A stretch of DNA of 37,763 nt from Bigelowiella natans CCMP2755 (taxonomy: Eukaryota; Protista; Cercozoa): assembly GCA_000320545.1 (NCBI GenBank), contig ADNK01001189.1, forward strand, positions 1 to 37,763, in the 5' to 3' direction. Positions 4,520 through 33,766 of the stretch are shown piece by piece. Positions within the stretch are counted from its first letter, which is position 1, and every line of letters starts with the position of its first letter. Below the pieces are notes generated by a model. That model was given only the letters and a program-made list of their open reading frames with translations, was not told the origin of the DNA and did not search any database. Made by a program: the position numbers and the translations under genes.

Positions 4520-7304
4520 TCAAGCCTGTACAGCTGGTACGACATAAGAGCCCAACTGATCGTCCTTCGCGTCCTCAGTTAAAACCAGAGAGGCTTGAGC
4601 CGCAATGAGATGCTGCCTTTCAACCTCCTCATCATCCTCGTCATCTTGGAGGTTCTTCGGGAAGAAGCGAGCATCGTTTCCTCCGCCCTCTTCTGCTATT
4701 GGCGAGCCTGGCAAGACGGGAGACCTCTCAACTCCCCCGAACACCTTGCTCATGAAGTTCTCCTCGCACGCGCCACAGAAGAGCCCGCTGTTGTTACGGC
4801 CGGCCTGCACGAGGCCCTCTTTCTCGTCCTTTGAGATGGAGAGCCCCAGCATCTTAATCAGAGAGCCGGAGAAACTTCCCATTAAGATCGTCGTAATGAC
4901 GACGATGGCCAGCGTCGTCGTCGCCATAAACTTAGAACTGGACGCTGGAACCTGCACAGCGAGCGCGAAAGAGACAGCACCACGCAGCCCCGCCATGACC
5001 ATTACGAGCTGCATTTGCCCCGTGATACGGTCCTTGAGCGCGAGGTTCAAGATGCTGGACAGTAGAGAGACTTGGATTATTCGTGATATGAGGCAGAGGG
5101 ATGTGCCTATCACTACGAAGAGAGGTGACCACGCATACCTGAGAAAGTTGATGGTATCATTATGATTTATGGTTATGATAAATATGACTGTCGTTGTTGC
5201 TCAGTTTCGGAAGATAGCAGAGGCGCTAAGAGTAGCTATGGATGTAAGAAAGGCGGATCGAACATGCATGTATCATGCCCTAGTCTCCCCCCCCCCTCCC
5301 CCTCTATTTCGTACTGGGATTGCGGGATGAAGGAGGTGATGGCCGTGATGCCGAGTACGATGAAAACCGCGGTTTCCGCTACGAATCCGAAGGCCTGTAC
5401 CGAAGACTCTACAGCGATACGGGAGCTCTCAGATAGATTGTGGCTGTGGTAGTGAGCCAGAACGATGGCGCAGAAGAACAAAGCCATGATTCCTGACATC
5501 TCGAGGATCTCGCCAACGCAGTAGCACATGTACGCGACAAAGAAAGTCATGCCTGCGGGGGTGGAGAGGAGGAGGAAAAGGAGGAGGAAAAGGAGGAGGA
5601 GGAGGAGGAGGAGGAGGAGGTGGTGGTGGTAATTTAATTCGAAAGTGGGACGTTTATGATTTTTTGCGATCATCACAACAATGTCCTCAGATGGTGTGGG
5701 GGAACTGCTACTACTACTACTGGAGTTTTGAAGTAAAATAAAAGGATATAGAAACGATCAAATAAACAAACGAACAAAGGAACAACAGCTTCTATCAACA
5801 CTACCCATCTCAATTTCTGGATGATTCTTGATGAGAGGAGTCTTGTTCGATACTAACGAGCACAAGAGGCCGAACGTCACCCCCAGCATAATGGAGACCA
5901 CCGTGATCCCCAAGAAGATAATCATGCACTTGCCGAGGTCGTGCATGGAGAAGTTGACCAAATCCGCGCTGTCAGTTAGGAAGGGGTGAAAGCCTTCAAG
6001 GGTCTTGTAGAGCGTGATACAGACGGCGTCGTTAAGGACGCTCTCCCCAAAAATGATTGCATGCAGCATCGGATTGGCATCCAGGCTCGCCATGATGGAC
6101 ACGGTAGATACGGGATCAGTACCTGAGGCAGGGGGGAGGGTTCAACGAGAAATCAGAGAGCGACTTACTCTATGCGTGTAATAAAGAGTGAGGAAGAAAT
6201 TCCAAATCTCCCACAACATTTCTTCTTCTATTTTTTTTTACAAATCGAACGAATTTCCAAAGACTAGCAAGAACATTATTTCAATGCTGCCGCCGAACTT
6301 ACTGGATATAAGCGTTCCGAACATCAGTGACTCAAGTGCGTTTTCGCTGTCAAGAGGAATGGTGCCAGCTTTTGAAAGTGCAAACAAAGAGAATCCGATG
6401 ATAAGTGTAGAGATTATGGTCCCAAAGAACGCAAAAACTGCGATGCTGCCGATGTTGGCGAAAAAGAGGGTTTTCTCGACTCCAAATCCAGCTTTGAAGA
6501 TAATGGGGGGCAAGAGAATGTAGAAGAATAGCTCTGGCTTGAATTCTAAGAAGCCCTTGCCTAGATACTCGTGAAGGATAACCATTGTCGTTCCAACTAC
6601 CATTCCAATCAGAATAGCTGCGACCGATTCAGGGAGGTAGAGCAGCTTGTATCTGCATTAGAACAGGAAATATCAGTACAACAAACAATGGCAATGCGTT
6701 TAATAGTGCACGAACATAAACATTTTCCGTATAAAAATTATGAGAACTATAGAACATTCAGGCATCAACTTCCACAGGAAGAGAGTTCTCTTTGTAAATT
6801 TTAATGAAGTCTCAGTTAATCAGTACCTGTGGAAATAGTACTTGTAGAACAACACGGAGCAGAGAACAATGACACTCCAGAGAGCTGTCATTCCCACATG
6901 ATAATGCTTTGCCGATACAGCCTCTTCTACCTATTTTGATCGGATGATTGCAAACTCGCATTAGAAATACATATACGAACGTAGTGCACACATGAACATA
7001 AAGGCAAGCAGTCTGCTCAGATAAAATAATAGTTACAAGAAATACATATTAAAACGAATGTCACATTGCAGACCTTATTTTCTCCCCTGCCAAGGTGCGT
7101 ATCTGAGAGTTCTGTAGTTGTAGTTGTATCACCATGTAGCCTCGTCTGGTTATTGAGGTGGCTCAAGTCTTGGCGTTCCAACAGTATTTCAGGTGCTGTC
7201 TCACTGGACAGTTGAGCTCCATTTACTGCAATTTCTGTTGGCCGTAGGGCCGTGGACAGGAAGGCAAAGATGAGAACGCTTGGGCGAATCATGGTGAGGA
7301 GCAT
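4520..7304 (-). CDS. Na+/H+ exchanger, CPA1 family (NHE/NHX; resembles intracellular NHE8-type), 6 exons
   Basis: Spliced motifs LPESVAAILIG, FKPELFFYILLPPIIFKAG, FFANIGSIAVFAFFGT, STDPVST, IFGESVLNDAV, SGIMALFFCAI, AETAVFIVLG and AGLRGAVSFALA. All introns are GT-AG. Hydrophobic N-terminus; start at 7304 or 7292; stop TGA at 4520-4522. Confidence 0.95.
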
Positions 7305-7838
7305 CTCGCCCGCCTCTTCAAGGGATGGGGACAGAAATGTGTCTGACAAAACCGCAGAAAATACAATCTATTTAATATGTACGACATCATTTGTTCGTGC
7401 ATTATCAATCTGGAGACAGATGGAGTTCCATGTTGATTTCCATGTGTAATTTGTTTTTCAACTCCGCGAGATTATGCTGCCTAATTTTGATGTGCGTCTT
7501 TCAAATATTGCAGTCTTTCATGTTGAACGAATGATATTTATTCCATGTTCCAGAAATGACGCGACATGAGCCAAAATGTGAGACTTCATGAGGAATTTCA
7601 ACGAGTCAAAAATCCATTCGAAATTCATCATATCCGTCACTTAACGTAATTTATTGACTTTTCCCCCCTCCATTTTAGTATCGCTTTTGAATCGAAAAGC
7701 AGGAAAATGGTCACGTAGTTTTTACATTGATTTTACTGTCCAGAATAACAACTCCAGGGCCGAAAATTTATAAATGGAATATTTCTACAGGAACAGCGAA
7801 ATTCGCTCTTCTAACTGTCCGACTGCGACGTTCGAAAA
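7305..7838. promoter_or_regulatory. Divergent (head-to-head) intergenic/promoter region between the NHE gene and the TPR-Grx-Myb gene
   Basis: 534 bp, AT-rich and microsatellite-free, between two outward-facing start codons. Promoter role is inferred from position only. Confidence 0.5.
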
Positions 7839-9954
7839 ATGGAGTCCGGTAGAGGCTCCATCACCCTGAAGGACATCCTTCTTTCCGCCGATGATCACTG
7901 GCGGAAGGGGGACAAAGATAAATGCATAAAAGCATACGAAGATGCTCTCGAATTTGCGAAGGGGGACGAGGAGAAGGAAGCAATGGTGCACATGGGCCTT
8001 GGCTTTGCGCTCCTTCGAATGCCAGAAGTTCGGGTCGCGACTATTTTTTCAAAATGCACATCTGGTGTTGAGTGAACATGCACAGTTTTGAAGAATTGGG
8101 TTTGAAGAATCAAAGTGTCTTACTCATATGAACGATGACGATCAAAATATGCTATTGATATTCGAATGGCAGCGAATAACGACCCGACTATATTCATTTT
8201 GTTGTGCTTCGTCTTCTTCGTTTTTAAAGTTGAAGAAGAAAGGAATCTTACACTTGCTCGGCGCGAAGTCCATCGCAGACAAACGGTTTCTTTAGATTAA
8301 TAGAACGACTTTTGAAATGGGTGCCTTGATTTTCGTATGCGGTGATGCTTTTTTTTCCTTCATGCGCTTCTCACAAGCTTTGTATGATCCAGGGGTGAAG
8401 AGGCTCAAGCAGTCTTTGTGCAAGATATTATAGCTAAAGCCTCGGCGCAAGTAAAGACTCTAGAATTAAAGAGTGGGGGTGCGAAGGAAATGCAGAGAGT
8501 TTCTGGCAGTGACGAGCGAAAAAGCGGAAACGAGACCAACGAGACAGGCATAGATAAGGGGGGGGCAGAAGGACCAGACGCCTACTCCTCTTGCGCGAAA
8601 GGCTTGGTAACACTTAGACACCATATCGGATCATTCACCCAAACGAGAAAGAAACACGGAAAAAACGGAAAAGAGGGGGGTTGGGAAGGTTGGGGGAAAG
8701 TGATATAGCCATCCAATTCACAGCGTTTGAAGTCGCTTATCTAAAAGACTATTGCACCTCTCTTGTGTTTGCTACTTTATGATCATCCTTCCTGTTTTAT
8801 CCCCTTCTTCTTCTACGTCTTCCCCCACCTAGATAATAAAGTATAAGGTCATGCTGTTCATGAAGGGCACTCCAACCCAGCCTGAATGTATACACAGTCT
8901 CAAAACTGGTAATCGCCGCACATGCAGTCTCCCCGACGTGGCAGCTGAATTTTAGGCCTTTAGAGATTACAAGTGCCATCCTTATTTCATTTCATTTACC
9001 ACTTGCCGCGACAGTGAAAATACTTGATGCGCTCGGTCTCGATTTCTATCCATACAACGTGATGAAAGCACATCCAAAGGTGATCGAAATCGCCCCCTTG
9101 CATCTTGCACCAGTTGATTTTGAATTAACTGTTTGCCCTCTCCTGGTGCTACATACTTAATGCTCCTCACAGCTGCAGGCCGCTATCAAGCAAATCGGCA
9201 AGTGGCCGTTCTTCCCTCAGGTAGAGAGTAGAGCGTTTCGCGGAGCGTCGCGCTGGCGCGGCGAGAGTAGCTAACTCGCGTAAGTTTTCCCTGGTATATG
9301 AGCAACATCCAACCTATGCTAACAGCTGTACGTCAACGGCAAGCTGTTCGGGGGTCGGGACGTAATCGAGGGCTTGGATGATGACGAAGAACTAGTAGAA
9401 GCTTTGGTAGCTGCGCGCTTCCCGATGAGGCCCCGTCGCCATTTTTCCAACTTGACTTACTTTCTTCTTTCTTCAAATTTAACTTTCTCCGGGATGACCC
9501 TTCGGTTGACGTATACGAACGCCTGCATGGCATTGTTATATCACAAAGTAGCCTGTATGGTTGAGCCGGTGTGTGCTGAGATTACCCTCCATTCGTGACC
9601 ATCCGCAGAAAAAGGCGGGCATTCCGAGCGAGGGCTTTGGCGATCCTCGCGAAAGATGCACGACAGATGTTAGATATGAACATGATATATATAATTTATA
9701 CCCCCCCCTCCCTTTTGAGTTGTTTTCCCCCCTTACAGCCTATGCTCCCTCCGACTGATTGTGCTCGAAATCATATCGACAGATAACAGCTCCTGGGTGC
9801 GTTTCCGGCCATGCAAAAGAGCTCCTCGGCGCTGCTGCAGCAGGCGATCAAGCCCTCCTCAGTGACGAAGATAGCGACCTCCTTGTGATCATCTCGAAAG
9901 AAGGCACTGGTACTACGTGGGATATTATGATTACCACTCAAAAGCATATGAGAA

Positions 9955-9988
<34 letters not shown>

Positions 9989-10089
9989 CCTAAAACTACT
10001 TGCTCCAATCCTGTGCAACGAAGGATGAAGCTGACCACGGATACAATACAATACAATGGCATGCACGCACCCACGCAAGTCCATATAAC

Positions 10090-10128
<39 letters not shown>

Positions 10129-10719
10129 GACCGACCGACACCAAGCACTCTACAGGTGACTGGAAAGCTCTCGCCGAGACTTTGAGTAAAAAATTTAGCC
10201 GCAAAGTCACCAGCAAGGAGATACGGAAAAGGTAACAATGCGAAGATCGTTTTATGCTTACTACAGGGCGTGCGGCCATGTCTGGCTCTCACCTTATAGC
10301 GATTAAGCGCTTTGATAGCATCGTATCACTCACAAGGCTGTTAGTGTCTGCCGCTCCTGCCCACCACTCGCTGTCGTGGTTACTACTGATGTGTACCCGC
10401 AACGGTCTCGATTGCGTTTCACGAGGGCAAATAATAATAATAATGCGTCCACGGTCTTAGGTGGAGGGAAATAAAACCGATAATAAAGCAGAAAGTCGAG
10501 TCGAAGGTAAGCGTGAAAGCATCGCAATTAACAAGAAACGCTCGAAAGGCGTAGCCATTCTGAACTATACCTTGAGATTGTACGTATGTGATAATCCAGG
10601 CGGAAATGAAGTGTGGACACTCCTGCTTCACATGCCCCACGCGCCACGAGTGCAAACTGCATGATGAGCTTGATCACGACATCGAGGATCTCGCCGTTCC
10701 TACCACCACGCCCAAGTAG
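7839..10719 (+). CDS. Multidomain protein (~385 aa): N-terminal TPR-like helices + monothiol glutaredoxin-like domain (CIHS) + Myb/SANT-like repeat + C-terminal CX3CX2CX5C motif
   Basis: 12 GT-AG exons with consistent phase: 7839-8027, 8230-8285, 8393-8606, 8833-8908, 9015-9079, 9173-9220, 9326-9406, 9609-9668, 9783-9909, 10156-10231, 10461-10506, 10600-10719 (1158 nt). TPR-like: ADDHWRKGDKDKCIKAYEDALEFA..AMVHMGLGFALL. Grx: KVMLFMKGTPTQPECIHSLKTVKILDALGLDFYPYNV..AIKQIGKWPFFPQLYVNGKLFGGRDVI. Myb: LSDEDSDLLVIISKEGTGDWKALAETLSKKFSRKVTSKEIRKRWREI. Tail: CGHSCFTCPTRHECKLHDELDHDIEDL. Confidence 0.85.
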
Positions 10720-11573
10720 CACAAAATAGCCGCCGCGTGCGTTAGATGGCAACGGGCTGGCCTTGCTGTCAGGCATGCACACATCATTGGACTGCGAACG
10801 TTCAATCTGCCATCAATTGCATCGCTTTGTGATCGATGACAAACAAAGGCACTATGTTCTCGCAGACATATGAACTACGTAAGATTATGATAAGACCGCT
10901 AGCTGCAGCTATCCAACGCAAAGAGCTGTGGCGTTGATGTATATCATGCATGTACTTACTTAATAATTCATAAAAGCTTGCGCCTGTCGCGCAGTGAAAT
11001 AACCTGGCTATCTAGCTATACATAATATACAATAACGGTGGCGCTGCACATGCATTAGTATTTTATGACATTAAAACGCACAAACAAAGACGTGCTAGCG
11101 TGGCTACAACCATGAGTGTTTTTGCTAAGCGCATGGCTTGCTACACATATATGATTAACAATTAGTACAATGAACGATATGATGCATCTAGCGTATGAGC
11201 GGGAAAAATTATGTCCCCAATGATCCCAGCACTGCGAAGCACTAATGCAGGGTTTACTATTTTACGTAACTCGCTTGTACAATTGGCCACATGCTAAAAC
11301 TTTGTGCAATTAGACGATCTAGCGATGTTTTATCAACCGTATGACAGAATGCTTGCAAGTCGCATTCTCCAATTTTATGTTGATTGACTAAGACTAATGC
11401 TTAGTTTCAAATCGTTCTTTGACATATCGCACGCAAGCGCTGTAGCCGCTGCTTAGCATAGCTACATTAGAATGGCCGTTGAAAGTATTTAATCATATGA
11501 TTACATCCGTCTCATACATCGCACGGTATTAGCCGCTGCTCGGCACGCATGCGACGTTGCGAAATGATCCGCA

Positions 11574-15195: not shown

Positions 15196-17384
15196 GGACG
15201 GAGAGATACCAGCGCCCATCACAAATAACCGTTCGAGCGTGTGAGTGAGAGTGAGAGTGTGAGTGCGAGTGCGAGTGTGTGCGCGCGCGTGTGTGTATGT
15301 TTGTGTTTGCGCGTGCGGATGTCTTCGTGATGCAGAAACTCCAGAGCGACCAAGGGTGGGAATTCGATCATCATTTTGTTTTCCGTTATACAATCCCTAG
15401 TGTTGTCCCTCCCCGTAACCCCCCCCTCCCAACGAACGTACAGCCATCGGATGATATGTTAGATAAACTGCTTGCCGGCGGCACAACCGACCTCGCTGCC
15501 CTTTTTCTTAGCTGTGCGTATAGATTCGAGATAGGTGCGCATGGCCTCCTCCCTCTTTTCTCGTTCAGCTCGTTGGACCGCCTATTTGAAGGAAGAGGAG
15601 GAGGAAGGTTGAGGAGGATGAAGAGGAGAAGGAGGAGGGGGAGAAGAAGAAACGGGCAGAGTAGCTTGTACTGTGAACATCCATGGAAACTCCCGCTACA
15701 ACAAGATTTTCGGGTACCCGTATATGTCGTAGAACAACGGTCGTAAGGCATTTGGCATTCTTATTTATCAGTGTTGCTTTTGTTATGTCGAAGCTGCATA
15801 GATTCTAGTATTGTTTTGAGTCTGAAGACCACAGAGACTACTTACTTCGCGTTTCCGCCTCATGGCCTCGAGAGCCTTCTGCTTCTGTCGCAAAGCGCGA
15901 ATCTCACGCTTCGAGAGGGCACGGTTGCTGCCATCGTCGGCCATATTCGACGACTTCTTTTCGTCCTTCTTAATCTGTGCAGGAAAAGACACTTATTTTC
16001 CCGCGCGCACGTTCTAACTTCTCGCGATTAAATATATCCGCGTGTATCATTATGAAAACTACATGAATAAATATATAAATTATTTATAAGAAAAAAATCC
16101 CCTAAAATTTCGGTTCGTGGGTAGGTCAACATAGATTTAGATTTACTACATTTTCAGTCGCTTTCCCATCATCACAATCATTATCAAATATCGTACCTGT
16201 TGAATCTTGACTGGGGCGGTCAGCAGGGTCGTGGTACCCGAGTTGCGAATCTCGTGTACTGGTAACTTAATCCAGCTGATTGGCACGGTCTCTTGATTGC
16301 CATACTCCGTAAAAGACACCATTATATCGCCAGAAGTCATCAAAGCTTCCACTGTCGCCGCATACCTGTGAGTACAAACACCGAGAGCGGCATTTACAAC
16401 ATGATGGTGATAACAGACGTTTCCTGACTTAAAAGTGCAAAAAGAATAATTCTGTTTTTTTCTCTGGAAAATAAGTAACATGAGAATGCCTAAATTTAGA
16501 CCCGTGGAAGAATCGGGTGTTCCTTATTTCTCAAAACAAAAATGCTGGAGGCCGCGCGAAGGGGAAAGAGATTTGCAGGCAGTATCTACGGCAGCCTGGC
16601 ATCATGATATTCAAAAACAAAACGCATATCACCATCTCTGGTCCTCGAAATACTTGGCCATACAATCCATTCCAACCTGCAGCGCTCCCTTTGACTGAAA
16701 AGTGTAGAGAAAGGGGAGAAGAATCACGTGAGTCAGTGTATCAATTGAGCTGCTTAAGAGACTGTAGGTATGGCTGATAATTTTCATATAATCAAAGAGG
16801 GAAAATAACGAATTTGCCCACCTTCTTATCGATGACCACCCACTCTGTCTTTTTCTTCTTTTCCTTCTCATCCTTCGAGTCGTTCTTGTGTAGCCCTGCT
16901 CCGCCCAGGCCTTCAGAAACTTGTCCCGATAACTCTACACAAAATTGGAGCAAGAATTACGAAGATGGCCCGGAAATATGGAAATAAGACTCAAAGTAAT
17001 AGACAGGAGGTGTTTGGGTGGATAACCTAGTGCCTCTTCAGCGGTGTCGACAACACCAAAGCTACAAAGAAGCTCCCCGATAGATTTGTTCACCTTTAAA
17101 TTTAACATTTTTTACAACAGATGACAGACCATAATTTCCCAAAACACGGTTATTCGAAAGACTGCTCGCAGGGAAAGCATGGGGCAGCGAACCCCCCACG
17201 CCTTTTCTTTCAAAACAACCATAGCTGGAGTCAATGAAGCGCCCGAGGTTTTCTTTAGATCAATTGCCAGAGATTTGGCTACGTATCGTAGCACAGGTCC
17301 GTCGAATTCAGGAAGGGCAAGCTCCTCCATCGCTTCGCGTGCTTCCTCAAAGCTGGCCTCGTCATAGGCCGTGTGCGCCTCCAT
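11574..17384 (-). CDS. ABCF3: ABC-F family ATPase, ABCF3/Gcn20-like, with an inserted Tudor domain
   Basis: Two ABC cassettes and no TM segments: [14 protein letters not shown] / [12 protein letters not shown] / [11 protein letters not shown] / IVSHDR; linker [29 protein letters not shown] (ABCF3/Gcn20-typical); [13 protein letters not shown] / [12 protein letters not shown] / [10 protein letters not shown] / FVSHDQ. ATG at 17384 (MEAHTAYDE..); last exon ..[35 protein letters not shown] ends at 11574. About 16 GT-AG exons; the junction around 15140-15490 is uncertain. Confidence 0.92.
16266..16685 (-). other. Tudor domain (TDRD3/SMN-type) inside the ABCF gene, split over exons 16688-16633 and 16365-16197
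   Basis: [17 protein letters not shown]|[33 protein letters not shown] matches the Tudor pattern G-x-x-C-x-A-x-[YW]-x-E-D-x-x-x-Y-x-A..V-x-[FY]-x-x-YGN-x-E. Both exons are in phase with flanking ABCF exons. Confidence 0.85.
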
Positions 17385-32876: not shown

Positions 32877-33766
32877 AATGTGGATGCAAGCCATCCTGCG
32901 ATGAACGCTTGTGCAATGAGCTAAGGCACAAAGCTGCTAATCTGTGCATCACATCGCGGCATGCTAGCACATGGTTGCGCAACTACAAACAAATTGCATG
33001 AATGCACTTGCACAAACTTCCACCAACTTTTTGCCTAACGTCGTTCAATCACCATGACTTCAGGCTACAAAAGCACGCGCCCAAGTCTGCATCGCACAGG
33101 GAGCCCTGTCAATCTAGCAATGCTGAATGGCACTCGAAACGTCATCAGTTCGAACAACGAGCTTGATGCAGAAATTAGAGACAGGGAACTAGCTTGCTAG
33201 CTAGCTAGCTAGCCCGCCCAGGCTAGCTTCTCGACTTTTTCAGTGCACCATCTCAATGTTGCGATGACGCAGCGAGTGTTGCGGGCCTGCGATGCAAGTT
33301 CACATTCATTGTGTCAACGTGCAAGCAACACAACTCCAATCACAATGCACAGCATGGCTTCTGGAACAATTCCTGAGTTTTTTTGTTTTTTCCCCAAAAA
33401 TTGTCATCATCCACATGCTGATCTTGGCAACTAGCCTTGCACTGAACGGCAAAGAGGCCACCAAACCTTTCCAGCTTTCGCCGCCTCTCGCTCTGTGCTG
33501 CGGTGAATGACCTGCCAAAGTGTGTCAGAAGATGAATTTGCCGGCCATGGCATGTCCAGCACAGAAGCTAGGAAGCCACAATGCACTGACCAGGAAACAG
33601 ACAACCGACTTGCGAGGAATTGCCCGCGGAAATTGTTCGCGCCATGCACGAACAATGAACAATGATGACAAACCACACTTCCAAAGTGTTGCAAGACACT
33701 TGCAGTGTGCGAAACGCAGTGCCTCGAGCTGGCTTCAGTGAAGACATTCCCTTTGGCTAATGTGGG
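32877..33766 (+). pseudogene. Degenerate gene or repeat relic with extreme context-specific TpA loss
   Basis: Intron-acceptor-like sites (ttttcag ~33243, caactag ~33434). The same-frame ORFs 33292-33510 and 33520-33741 are separated by one TGA, lack Tyr and are rich in Cys/His. No family recognised. Confidence 0.4.

What the first reader, a model, noticed from the sequence alone, without database searches (positions are those of the whole stretch)
7839..10719. Hidden TPR-glutaredoxin-Myb-Cys4 fusion: candidate one-component Fe-S/redox-sensing transcription regulator
Seen: 12 small exons, mostly missed by the ORF track, splice with canonical sites into one 385-aa frame carrying TPR-like helices, a full class-II-type Grx fold (VMLFMKGTP..P.C..S, WPFFPQLYVNG..GG.D), a Myb-like repeat with a basic third helix (KVTSKEIRKRW) and a terminal Cys cluster. 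Established: CGFS monothiol Grx3/4 proteins signal iron status through bridged [2Fe-2S] clusters to separate transcription factors in fungi (Aft1/2, Php4/HapX, Fep1). Inference: sensor, DNA-binding module and metal-cluster site are fused in one chain here. I do not know this architecture from any characterised protein.
Basis: partly seen in the sequence, partly recalled or inferred. Interest (0 to 1): 0.9.

Follow-up and report, generated by a model that had tools for sequence, protein, structure and literature searches.

The report
Glutaredoxin fused to Myb-like, cysteine tail
This is a real, expressed 12-exon gene of the marine alga Bigelowiella natans that joins an iron-sulfur-type glutaredoxin to a probable Myb/SANT-like helix bundle and a highly conserved four-cysteine tail; the gene is already in the public annotation, the combination is uncharacterised, and a role as a DNA-binding iron sensor is possible but unproven.

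Summary
Transcriptome contigs from three studies show all 11 GT..AG junctions. The 12 exons match, exon by exon, a public 387-aa protein: JGI Bigna1 87875 of Bigelowiella natans, P0067. So the gene is not hidden, and it has 387 residues, not 385.

The domains:
- **TPR-like helices (8-111):** confident model, TPR structures at Z 11-14.
- **Class II-type glutaredoxin (148-247):** Pfam 48 bits; human GLRX5 E 2e-19. It has the class-specific loop, but CIHS in place of CGFS.
- **Three-helix Myb/SANT-like domain (291-349):** Pfam 22.0 bits against a cut-off of 22.9, and only weak structural matches.
- **Tail:** CX3CX2CX5C-x2-H...DIEDL, the best conserved segment (84% identity to Chlorarachnion reptans).

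The tail's CX2CX5C core matches the [4Fe-4S] site of NUBP1/Nbp35, which receives clusters from the glutaredoxin GLRX3 (PMC8007109).

The Myb-like plus Cys-tail module recurs at two more B. natans loci. One follows a canonical CGFS glutaredoxin.

About half of the contig depth in two runs, and all of it in a third, retains intron 9407-9608. That form encodes a protein without the Myb-like domain and tail.

An Fe-S role is plausible, DNA binding is untested, and I found no literature on this architecture. The scan had not reported this gene before.

The parts
7813..10872 (+). Transcribed span seen in transcriptome contigs (5' UTR from about 7813-7823, 3' UTR to about 10872)
   Evidence: Contig pieces, table 8 (X4 record 13 starts at 7813; X2 record 12 ends at 10872).
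7839..8033 (+). Exon 1, aa 1-65, start codon; first TPR-like helices
   Evidence: Joint 8033/8230 in 3 runs; equals P0067 1-65; sub-threshold TPR_2/TPR_8 hits.
8230..8285 (+). Exon 2, aa 66-84, TPR-like helix
   Evidence: Joints 8033/8230 and 8285/8393; P0067 66-83.
8393..8606 (+). Exon 3, aa 84-155: end of the TPR-like domain (to aa 111, about 8474), low-complexity linker, first Grx helix. There is no intron at 8451-8471.
   Evidence: Contigs run unbroken over 8392-8605; P0067 85-155; AF2 helices up to residue 111 at pLDDT 84-94, linker at pLDDT 22-32.
8833..8908 (+). Exon 4, aa 156-181: Grx strand 1, loop K-GTPTQ-PE and active site C174-I-H-S (Cys codon 8887-8889)
   Evidence: Joint 8606/8833; the exon alone hits GLRX5 and Grx3 at the active-site region, E 0.005-0.03.
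9015..9079 (+). Exon 5, aa 181-202, Grx helix 2 / strand 2
   Evidence: Joints 8908/9015 and 9079/9173; P0067 182-202.
9173..9220 (+). Exon 6, aa 203-218, Grx WPFFPQ (cis-Pro loop)
   Evidence: Joints; aligned to WPTIPQ of GLRX5.
9326..9406 (+). Exon 7, aa 219-245, Grx LYVNGKLFGGRD and last helix
   Evidence: Joint 9220/9326; the exon alone hits GLRX3 residues 75-97.
9407..9608 (+). Intron 7, often retained. The retained form runs into a stop at 9596-9598 and gives the 308-aa TPR-Grx-only product (P0001).
   Evidence: Spliced against retained contig depth: X2 37 against 38.6; X4 38.9 against 34.9; X1 retained only, 121.5. The tail of P0001 equals the intron translation.
9609..9668 (+). Exon 8, aa 246-265, conserved G(I/V)P.EGFG.PRERC linker
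   Evidence: Joints 9406/9609 (X2, X4) and 9668/9783 (3 runs); conserved in C. reptans.
9783..9909 (+). Exon 9, aa 266-308: linker and helix 1 of the Myb/SANT-like domain (from aa 291, about 9858)
   Evidence: Joints; Pfam Myb_DNA-bind_6 292-344, 22.0 bits; AF2 helix 293-305.
10156..10231 (+). Exon 10, aa 308-333: Myb-like helix 2 (W309) and start of basic helix 3 (KVTSKEIRKR)
   Evidence: Joints 9909/10156 and 10231/10461; AF2 helices 310-321 and 327-349.
10461..10506 (+). Exon 11, aa 333-348: W334 and the rest of helix 3
   Evidence: Joints. The intron position just before this Trp is shared with the C3580 paralogue.
10600..10719 (+). Exon 12, aa 349-387 plus stop: Cys cluster C353-x3-C357-x2-C360-P-x4-C366-x2-H369 (10612-10662) and DIEDL (10678-10692)
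   Evidence: Joint 10506/10600; 84% identical to C. reptans over aa 350-380; motif kept in the paralogues and in P0028/P0065.

Best explanation
The locus is one expressed nuclear gene of Bigelowiella natans (JGI Bigna1 87875, 387 aa, no N-terminal targeting signal evident). It encodes a soluble multidomain glutaredoxin: TPR-like domain, class II-type monothiol Grx (active site CIHS), SANT/Myb-like three-helix domain, and a CX3CX2CX5C-x2-H...DIEDL tail.

Most likely it is an Fe-S-cluster-handling adaptor. By inference, the Grx domain binds a glutathione-ligated [2Fe-2S] cluster through Cys174. It either passes the cluster to, or shares it with, the C-terminal cysteine site, whose CX2CX5C core matches the [4Fe-4S] site that GLRX3 loads on NUBP1. 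The TPR-like and SANT/Myb-like modules would tether this unit to partner proteins or chromatin rather than read a specific DNA sequence.

Shown: the gene structure, its expression, the domain identities and the conservation pattern. Inferred: metal binding, cluster hand-off and the nature of the partners.
For: Gene and transcript:
- 11 joints in 3 studies.
- Exons equal P0067.

Grx class II features:
- Pfam Glutaredoxin 48.1 bits against a cut-off of 22.9.
- PDB phmmer gives GLRX5 at 1.9e-19 and 13 monothiol Grx entries at or below 1.5e-12, against class I at 1.5e-3 or weaker.
- Foldseek top hits are AtGRXcp, Grx5 and GLRX3.
- K-GTPTQ-PE-C fits the 5-residue loop extension that defines Fe-S-transferring Grxs (PMC7351949).

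Tail:
- It is the most conserved segment, 84% against 47-54% for the other domains.
- C-x(3,5)-C-x2-C-x5-C-x2-H is invariant in the orthologue, two paralogues and distant kin.
- NUBP1/Nbp35 CX13CX2CX5C binds a stable [4Fe-4S] cluster and is loaded by GLRX3 (PMC8007109).
- RseC CX5CX2CX5C forms an Fe-S cluster (PMC11729352).

Partner-binding modules:
- TPR-like fold with TPR structures at Z 11-14.
- TPR_12 is over the cut-off in the distant kin P0028.
- Best structural neighbours of the Myb-like module are the SANT-SLIDE regions of ISWI/ISW1a/CHD1 and the DMAP1 SANT domain.
- Across the wider family the TPR domain, the Grx cysteine and the tail are kept, while the Myb-like part is not (12% identity, no tryptophans).
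Against: - No metal-binding data exist, and a Cys4 site may bind zinc instead.
- The active site is CIHS/CTYS, not CGFS; Gly at position 2 is part of the class II mode of GSH binding (PMC7351949).
- The tail is modelled with low confidence (pLDDT about 40).
- The Grx-tail complex prediction gave no answer.
- The similarity to NUBP1 is at motif level only: the first spacing differs and there is no P-loop domain.
- Helix 3 of the Myb-like domain is strongly basic (9 K/R against 3 D/E; domain pI 9.8). The weak sequence hits are to DNA-binding Mybs (TRF1, c-Myb). Both fit DNA binding better than a classical acidic SANT domain.
Confidence: 0.4

Rival explanations
1. One reading: a one-component iron/redox-sensing transcription regulator. 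A cluster held between the Grx cysteine (with GSH) and the tail cysteines would switch the neighbouring Myb-like domain between DNA-binding and non-binding states. This would be the fungal Grx4-Fep1/Php4/Aft arrangement collapsed into one chain.
For: - Myb_DNA-bind_6 E 1.9e-4 and Myb_DNA-binding E 2.9e-3 over residues 292-344.
- Weak PDB hits to TRF1 and c-Myb over residues 287-340.
- ESM-feature neighbours are all Myb clusters, score 0.79.
- Three helices with a long basic third helix.
- The Myb-like domain and Cys tail always occur together, in three B. natans genes, with a shared intron position.
- In fungi, cysteines of the transcription factor co-ligate the Grx-bound cluster (established knowledge).
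Against: - All Myb signals are below curated or significance thresholds.
- There is no Pfam Myb hit in the C. reptans orthologue or the C1338 paralogue.
- It is a single repeat whose first Trp is replaced by Leu.
- Foldseek finds nothing below E 2, and VIA Z is at most 5.9, where chance helical matches are common.
- The region is the least conserved folded part in distant kin.
- There is no localisation or DNA-binding evidence.
Confidence: 0.25
2. A thiol-redox or zinc protein without an Fe-S cluster. The tail would be a small zinc knuckle that stabilises the helical domain, and the non-CGFS Grx domain would act in (de)glutathionylation or serve only as a binding fold.
For: - The active site departs from CGFS (CIHS, or CTYS in C. 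reptans).
- The Grx domain of the distant kin has lost the GG motif and the WP motif but keeps the tail.
- Cys4 or Cys4-His sites with short spacings commonly bind zinc (general knowledge).
- There is a weak hit to a Cys-rich FeoB-associated family only.
Against: - The class-specific loop that disfavours oxidoreductase activity is present.
- The C1338 paralogue carries a canonical CGFS/WPTFPQ/GGCD Grx before the same tail.
- The CX2CX5C spacing is documented for Fe-S sites.
Confidence: 0.2
3. The locus is really two genes or an annotation artefact: a TPR-Grx gene ending in intron 7, and a separate downstream Myb-Cys gene.
For: - Intron 9407-9608 is retained in about half of the contig depth in X2 and X4, and the spliced joint is absent from X1 contigs.
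- The public model P0001 stops in that intron.
Against: - The spliced joint 9406/9609 is present in two studies.
- The frame stays open across it.
- The C. reptans transcript P0007/P0071 and the intron-poor C1338 paralogue encode Grx, Myb-like domain and tail in one frame.
- No start codon or promoter evidence exists for a downstream gene.
Confidence: 0.03

Closest known systems
Class II (CGFS-type, monothiol) glutaredoxins: GLRX5/Grx5, Grx3/4-PICOT, plant GRXS14-S17
   Same: - The Grx fold.
- About 40% identity to human GLRX5 over 100 residues.
- The conserved Lys and the 5-residue loop extension before the single active-site Cys.
- Ser at position 4, the WP..P cis-Pro loop and the GG.D motif.
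- Multidomain fusions are normal for this class (Trx-Grx, GIY-YIG-Grx in GRXS16; Grx-rhodanese and Grx-IscA-type among the hits).
   Different: - The active site is CIHS (CTYS in C. reptans) instead of CGFS.
- WPFFPQ replaces WPT(I/V)PQ.
- The partners are a TPR-like domain, a Myb/SANT-like domain and a Cys4-His tail. I did not find these described with a Grx.
N-terminal [4Fe-4S] site of NUBP1/Nbp35 (CX13CX2CX5C), loaded by GLRX3
   Same: - A CX2C-P-x4-C core with a fourth cysteine upstream.
- In humans a class II Grx is the cluster donor to this site (PMC8007109).
- Here donor-type and acceptor-type elements sit in one chain.
   Different: - The first spacing is 3 (5 in distant kin), not 13.
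- The site is at the C-terminus.
- There is no P-loop NTPase domain.
- The resemblance is at motif level only, and homology was not shown. My scan of B. natans ParA-family loci for the Nbp35 motif found nothing usable.
Fungal Grx4-transcription factor iron sensors (Aft1/2, Fep1, Php4/HapX)
   Same: A monothiol Grx plus a cysteine-bearing DNA-binding partner that could share a [2Fe-2S] cluster.
   Different: - Those are separate polypeptides.
- Their DNA-binding domains are GATA, CCAAT-complex or Aft-type, not Myb.
- Nothing here shows DNA binding or an iron response.
SANT/Myb single-repeat domains (ISWI/CHD1 SANT-SLIDE, DMAP1 SANT, TRF1 telobox Myb)
   Same: - A three-helix bundle with a long third helix.
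- W309 and W334 sit at the second and third aromatic positions.
- A G-x-G-x-W turn.
- These are the top structural neighbours and the weak sequence hits.
   Different: - The first Trp is replaced by Leu.
- The W2-W3 spacing is longer (23 residues).
- Scores are under the Pfam cut-offs.
- The domain is followed at once by a Cys4-His cluster.

Membership tests
Class II (monothiol, Fe-S-transferring) glutaredoxin | Glutaredoxin fold recognised by the curated profile | tested here: met
   PF00462 48.1 bits against a cut-off of 22.9, residues 161-225. Foldseek prob 1.00 to AtGRXcp, Grx5 and GLRX3.
Class II (monothiol, Fe-S-transferring) glutaredoxin | Five-residue loop extension between the conserved Lys and the active-site Cys (PMC7351949) | tested here: met
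   K-GTPTQ-PE-C174 aligns without gaps to K-GTPEQ-PQ-C of human GLRX5. The definition is quoted.
Class II (monothiol, Fe-S-transferring) glutaredoxin | CGFS active-site tetrapeptide | tested here: not met
   CIHS in B. natans and CTYS in C. reptans. The C1338 paralogue does have CGFS.
Class II (monothiol, Fe-S-transferring) glutaredoxin | GSH-binding motifs: WP-x-x-P (cis-Pro) and GG-x-D | tested here: met
   WPFFPQ and GGRD align to WPTIPQ and GGCD of GLRX5. Thr is replaced by Phe, and Cys by Arg.
Class II (monothiol, Fe-S-transferring) glutaredoxin | Binds and transfers a GSH-ligated [2Fe-2S] cluster | not testable with these tools
   Needs anaerobic purification or reconstitution and spectroscopy.
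Myb/SANT domain (PF00249, PF13921) | Score at or above Pfam's gathering threshold | tested here: not met
   Myb_DNA-bind_6 22.0 against 22.9; Myb_DNA-binding 18.1 against 24.4. No hit at E up to 10 in the C. reptans orthologue or the C1338 paralogue.
Myb/SANT domain (PF00249, PF13921) | Three-helix bundle with helix-turn-helix, similar to solved SANT/Myb domains | tested here: inconclusive
   - AF2 helices at 293-305, 310-321 and 327-349, pLDDT 61-78.
- Paralogue module: pTM 0.57.
- VIA top hits are ISWI SANT-SLIDE Z 5.9, ISW1a 5.3, CHD1 4.8 and DMAP1 4.5, all under the Z 8 caution line.
- Foldseek best E is 2.2.
Myb/SANT domain (PF00249, PF13921) | Three regularly spaced Trp/aromatic core residues | tested here: inconclusive
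   L at the first position, then W309 and W334. The tryptophans are kept in C. reptans and both paralogues and absent in P0028/P0065.
Myb/SANT domain (PF00249, PF13921) | Sequence-specific DNA binding (Myb) as opposed to protein or histone binding (SANT) | not testable with these tools
   Only the charge is available: domain pI 9.8, helix 3 with 9 K/R against 3 D/E.
TPR repeat domain | Profile match over the cut-off | tested here: not met
   TPR_2 14.7 against 27 for P0067. The distant family member P0028 does pass (TPR_12 31.4 against 30.1).
TPR repeat domain | Stacked helix-turn-helix hairpins superposable on solved TPR domains | tested here: met
   Five helices in residues 10-111 at pLDDT 84-94. 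Nearly all top VIA matches are TPR proteins: TSK Z 14.2, Pins/LGN 12.4-12.7, KLC2 12.5, CTPR 11.2. Helical repeats score high easily.
Nbp35/NUBP1 N-terminal ferredoxin-like [4Fe-4S] site | CX13CX2CX5C followed by a P-loop NTPase domain | tested here: not met
   Only the CX2CX5C core is shared (C357, C360, C366). The first spacing is 3, the site is C-terminal and there is no ParA domain. It is not a member; the likeness is functional only.

The most novel reading that the evidence does not exclude
A single eukaryotic polypeptide in which a class II glutaredoxin and an adjacent CXnCX2CX5C-H site jointly hold an Fe-S cluster that gates a Myb-like DNA-binding domain. This would be a one-component iron/redox-sensing transcription factor of a marine alga. 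The Myb-like plus Cys4 unit would be a new cluster-dependent DNA-binding module, used in at least three B. natans genes.
Probability: 0.15. Interest if true: 0.8.

Novelty: new variant of a known kind. Interest (0 to 1): 0.5.

Why it matters
Class II glutaredoxins carry Fe-S clusters and report iron status to separate partners. To my knowledge, how marine algae sense iron at the level of transcription is largely unknown.

This gene places a class II-type Grx, a putative nucleic-acid- or chromatin-binding helix bundle and an Fe-S-type cysteine site in one chain. The bundle-plus-cysteine module recurs in two further genes. This gives a compact, testable candidate for cluster hand-off or cluster-dependent regulation.

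It is also a natural 'Rosetta-stone' fusion that parallels the GLRX3-to-NUBP1 transfer seen in humans. If the protein proves to bind only zinc and proteins, it is a lineage-restricted scaffold of modest interest.

Tried and rejected
**Exon-by-exon searches**
- Exon-by-exon Pfam scans gave only sub-threshold TPR hits and a weak NADH-G_4Fe-4S_3 hit. The short Grx exons gave nothing.
- PF00462 over the whole genome did not list this locus, because its Grx domain is cut into four small exons.
- PDB searches with exon 5 and with the tail exon gave nothing meaningful.

**How the joined model was handled**
- I did not send a joined spliced sequence to any search tool.
- Exons were joined only inside scripts, to count frame and stops.
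- All later whole-protein work used the public protein P0067 by reference. It equals the exons.

**Searches for relatives**
- A word-indexed search with the C-terminal 129 residues of the C. reptans orthologue found only that protein itself.
- A profile search added only P0065, so the family looks small. That search is limited in sensitivity.

**Structure and complex prediction**
- Foldseek on the paralogue's Myb-Cys module gave no match below E 2.
- Complex prediction with Grx 148-252, a 2Fe-2S cluster and tail 340-387 gave no answer (ipSAE 0.01). This counts neither for nor against binding.

**Other dead ends**
- A look for the B. natans Nbp35 N-terminal motif, to test homology with the tail, found no usable exon in the ParA-family loci fetched.
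- The 22 loose letters ahead of 7813 in one contig are not in the window.
- I could not place the N-terminal exons of the C1338 and C3580 paralogues.
- Raw RNA reads of run X21 covered only the 3' end and showed no joints.
- A paper search linking WhiB to the CX2CX5C spelling found nothing. The WhiB-like parallel (C-Xn-C-X2-C-X5-C, [4Fe-4S]) therefore rests on my memory alone and is not used as evidence.
Full report
**Observation**

By eye and by script, the + strand between 7839 and 10719 holds small exons with GT..AG borders that read in one frame.

I laid Logan contigs of three runs from three studies on 7700-10900. These runs hold about 45-55% of the words of the stretch, as expected for spliced mRNA. 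They showed 11 joints, all GT..AG:
- 8033/8230
- 8285/8393
- 8606/8833
- 8908/9015
- 9079/9173
- 9220/9326
- 9406/9609
- 9668/9783
- 9909/10156
- 10231/10461
- 10506/10600

My first guess of a 21-base intron at 8451-8471 was wrong, because contigs read through it. Exon 1 ends at 8033, not 8027.

The result is 12 exons and 387 codons.

**Identity of the organism and gene**

A phmmer search with exon 1 alone, by reference, found two useful proteins:
- P0001, 308 aa, 100% identical over the exon.
- P0007, 360 aa, 61% identical over the exon.

Cluster look-up then showed two things:
- P0001's cluster contains P0067, 387 aa, labelled EP00466_Bigelowiella_natans_P010636 = jgi/Bigna1/87875.
- P0007/P0071 come from Chlorarachnion reptans (MMETSP0109).

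Every exon translation occurs in order in P0067. So the window is B. natans (91.4 Mb assembly), and the full gene model is already public. It is small-exon and easy to miss in an ORF list, but it is not hidden.

P0001 is a model of the isoform that retains intron 9407-9608 and stops at 9596-9598. Spliced and retained forms have similar contig depth in two runs. The third run has only the retained form at that place. High intron retention is a known trait of B. natans (PMC6105332), so I do not read regulation into this without more data.

I sent no joined spliced sequence to any search tool. Exons were searched by reference, and after the identical public protein was used by id.

**Domains**

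*N-terminus.* Residues 10-111 form five confident helices (pLDDT 84-94).
- Almost all best structural matches are TPR proteins: TSK Z 14.2, Pins/LGN, KLC2 and designed CTPR at Z 11-12.7.
- Pfam TPR profiles are sub-threshold for this protein.
- They are over the cut-off for a distant family member.

*Glutaredoxin.*
- PF00462 scores 48.1 bits, cut-off 22.9.
- Human GLRX5 scores E 1.9e-19, and thirteen monothiol Grx structures rank ahead of any class I Grx.
- Foldseek agrees.
- Even single exons hit GLRX5 and GLRX3 at collinear positions.
- The alignment to GLRX5 shows the conserved Lys and the five-residue loop (K-GTPTQ-PE-C). Trnka et al. identify this loop as the determinant of the Fe-S-transferring class (PMC7351949).
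- WPFFPQ and GGRD are also present.
- The tetrapeptide is CIHS (CTYS in C. reptans), not CGFS. The protein is therefore class II-like rather than a textbook member.

*Myb/SANT-like domain, residues 291-349.*
- Pfam Myb_DNA-bind_6 scores 22.0 bits (E 1.9e-4) against a cut-off of 22.9. Myb_DNA-binding scores 18.1 against 24.4.
- Weak PDB hits go to TRF1 and c-Myb (E 0.2-0.3).
- ESM-feature neighbours are all Myb clusters, but at a score of only 0.79.
- AF2 gives three helices, the third long and basic.
- I folded the same module from a paralogue, because it lies in one exon and has a reference (pTM 0.57).
- For that model, Foldseek finds nothing significant.
- VIA-align puts ISWI and ISW1a SANT-SLIDE, CHD1 SANT-SLIDE, DMAP1 SANT and plant Myb/GARP domains among the top rows. 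Z is only 4-6 and they sit among many other helix-turn-helix proteins.
- I take a SANT/Myb-like fold as likely, roughly two in three. DNA binding remains open.

*Tail.* The motif is C353-x3-C357-x2-C360-P-x4-C366-x2-H369, followed by DIEDL.
- It is 84% identical between the two chlorarachniophytes, against 47-54% for the folded domains.
- The pattern C-x(3,5)-C-x2-C-x5-C-x2-H...DIE(D/E) is kept in all relatives found.
- No Pfam family or PDB entry matches it significantly.

**Relatives**

The family looks small in the databases searched. It consists of:
- B. natans and C. reptans.
- A 427/428-aa group (P0028, P0065 and kin) from marine metatranscriptome contigs of unknown organisms.

The metatranscriptome group keeps the TPR domain (40% identity), the Grx cysteine in a degenerate Grx domain, and the tail. 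It does not keep the tryptophans of the Myb-like part.

Within B. natans I found two more loci with the Myb-like-plus-tail module:
- **C1338.** The module follows a canonical CGFS / WPTFPQ / GGCD glutaredoxin.
- **C3580.** No Grx exon was detectable within about 6 kb upstream. The intron before the last Trp sits at the same place as in the window gene.

The Myb-like domain and the cysteine tail therefore travel as a unit, twice attached to a class II-type Grx.

**Mechanism**

The following points are documented:
- Class II Grxs bind GSH-ligated [2Fe-2S] clusters and pass them on.
- Human GLRX3 loads the CX13CX2CX5C site of NUBP1, where a [4Fe-4S] cluster forms (PMC8007109).
- A CX5CX2CX5C site in RseC also forms an Fe-S cluster (PMC11729352).

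From these points I infer that the window protein handles an Fe-S cluster with its Grx cysteine and its tail. The tail would act either as donor and acceptor in one chain, or as a shared ligand set.

My estimates:
- Adaptor reading, 0.4. In its favour, the Myb-like part is the least conserved across the family, is a single sub-threshold repeat, and has SANT-SLIDE domains as nearest structures.
- Transcription-factor reading, 0.25. In its favour are the basic third helix, the TRF1/c-Myb hits and the constant pairing with the tail.
- Zinc/redox reading, 0.2.

A complex prediction of the Grx domain with the tail gave no answer.

**Comparison and novelty**

The protein is closest to class II glutaredoxins and meets most of their defining features, but not the CGFS motif.

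Grx fusions are common. Examples are Trx-Grx, Grx-rhodanese and Grx-IscA-type among the hits, and plant GRXS16 with a nuclease domain (from my own knowledge).

I found no paper describing a Grx joined to TPR, Myb/SANT-like and Cys4 modules:
- The survey of Grx domain combinations (PMC2679010) mentions neither TPR nor Myb nor SANT.
- Searches for monothiol glutaredoxin with SANT domain, for class II glutaredoxin with fusion and tetratricopeptide, and for protein id 87875 with Bigelowiella returned nothing.

I class it as a new variant of a known kind. The gene is annotated but uncharacterised and of moderate interest. It would be of high interest only if cluster-dependent DNA binding were shown.

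Noticed in passing
G000:C1338 (L009 872-1642, minus strand; Grx exons at L009 1501-1596 and 1770-1841): A paralogue in the same genome. A canonical CGFS / WPTFPQ / GGCD glutaredoxin is followed in one large last exon by a helical linker, a Myb-like domain with both tryptophans, and ...PCGKSCSECETRPSCHLHDIEDLI-stop. Its N-terminal exons were not found.
   Followed up: partly
G000:C3580 (L033 5916-6122 and about 6182-6337, plus strand): A third locus with the Myb-like plus CX3CX2CX5C-x2-H module (…RWETIAPRV…MPCGNTCSACPSQSTCSFHD). The intron before the last Trp is at the same position as window intron 10232-10460. No Grx exon was detectable within about 6 kb upstream.
   Followed up: partly
window 9407-9608: Intron 7 is retained in about half of the contig depth in two runs, and in all of it in a third. 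The retained form gives a 308-aa TPR-Grx protein with a 63-aa intron-coded tail, and this is the model stored as P0001. Smaller retained-intron contigs also exist at 9639-9812 and 10204-10488.
   Followed up: partly
C. reptans protein P0072 (347 aa): A variant of the orthologue that diverges exactly where the last intron lies in B. natans and lacks the cysteine tail. Tail-less isoforms therefore occur in both species.
   Followed up: no
window 7813 (run X4 contig): One transcriptome contig carries 22 letters ahead of 7813 that match nothing in the window. This may be an upstream non-coding exon on another contig, a leader, or a chimeric contig.
   Followed up: partly
window 9958-9986 and 10087-10125: (TA)n and (CA)n microsatellites inside intron 9 (9910-10155). 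The read tool skipped them as repeats.
   Followed up: no
proteins P0057-P0064: Metagenomic monothiol glutaredoxins fused to rhodanese (PF00581) and, in two cases, also to an IscA-type Fe-S biogenesis domain (PF01521). These are further examples of Grx fused to sulfur or cluster-handling partners.
   Followed up: no
window 16197-16688 and 32877-33766: Earlier first-reader notes on this window report a Tudor domain inside an ABCF3/Gcn20-like gene and a TpA-depleted 890-bp stretch. I did not examine either.
   Followed up: no
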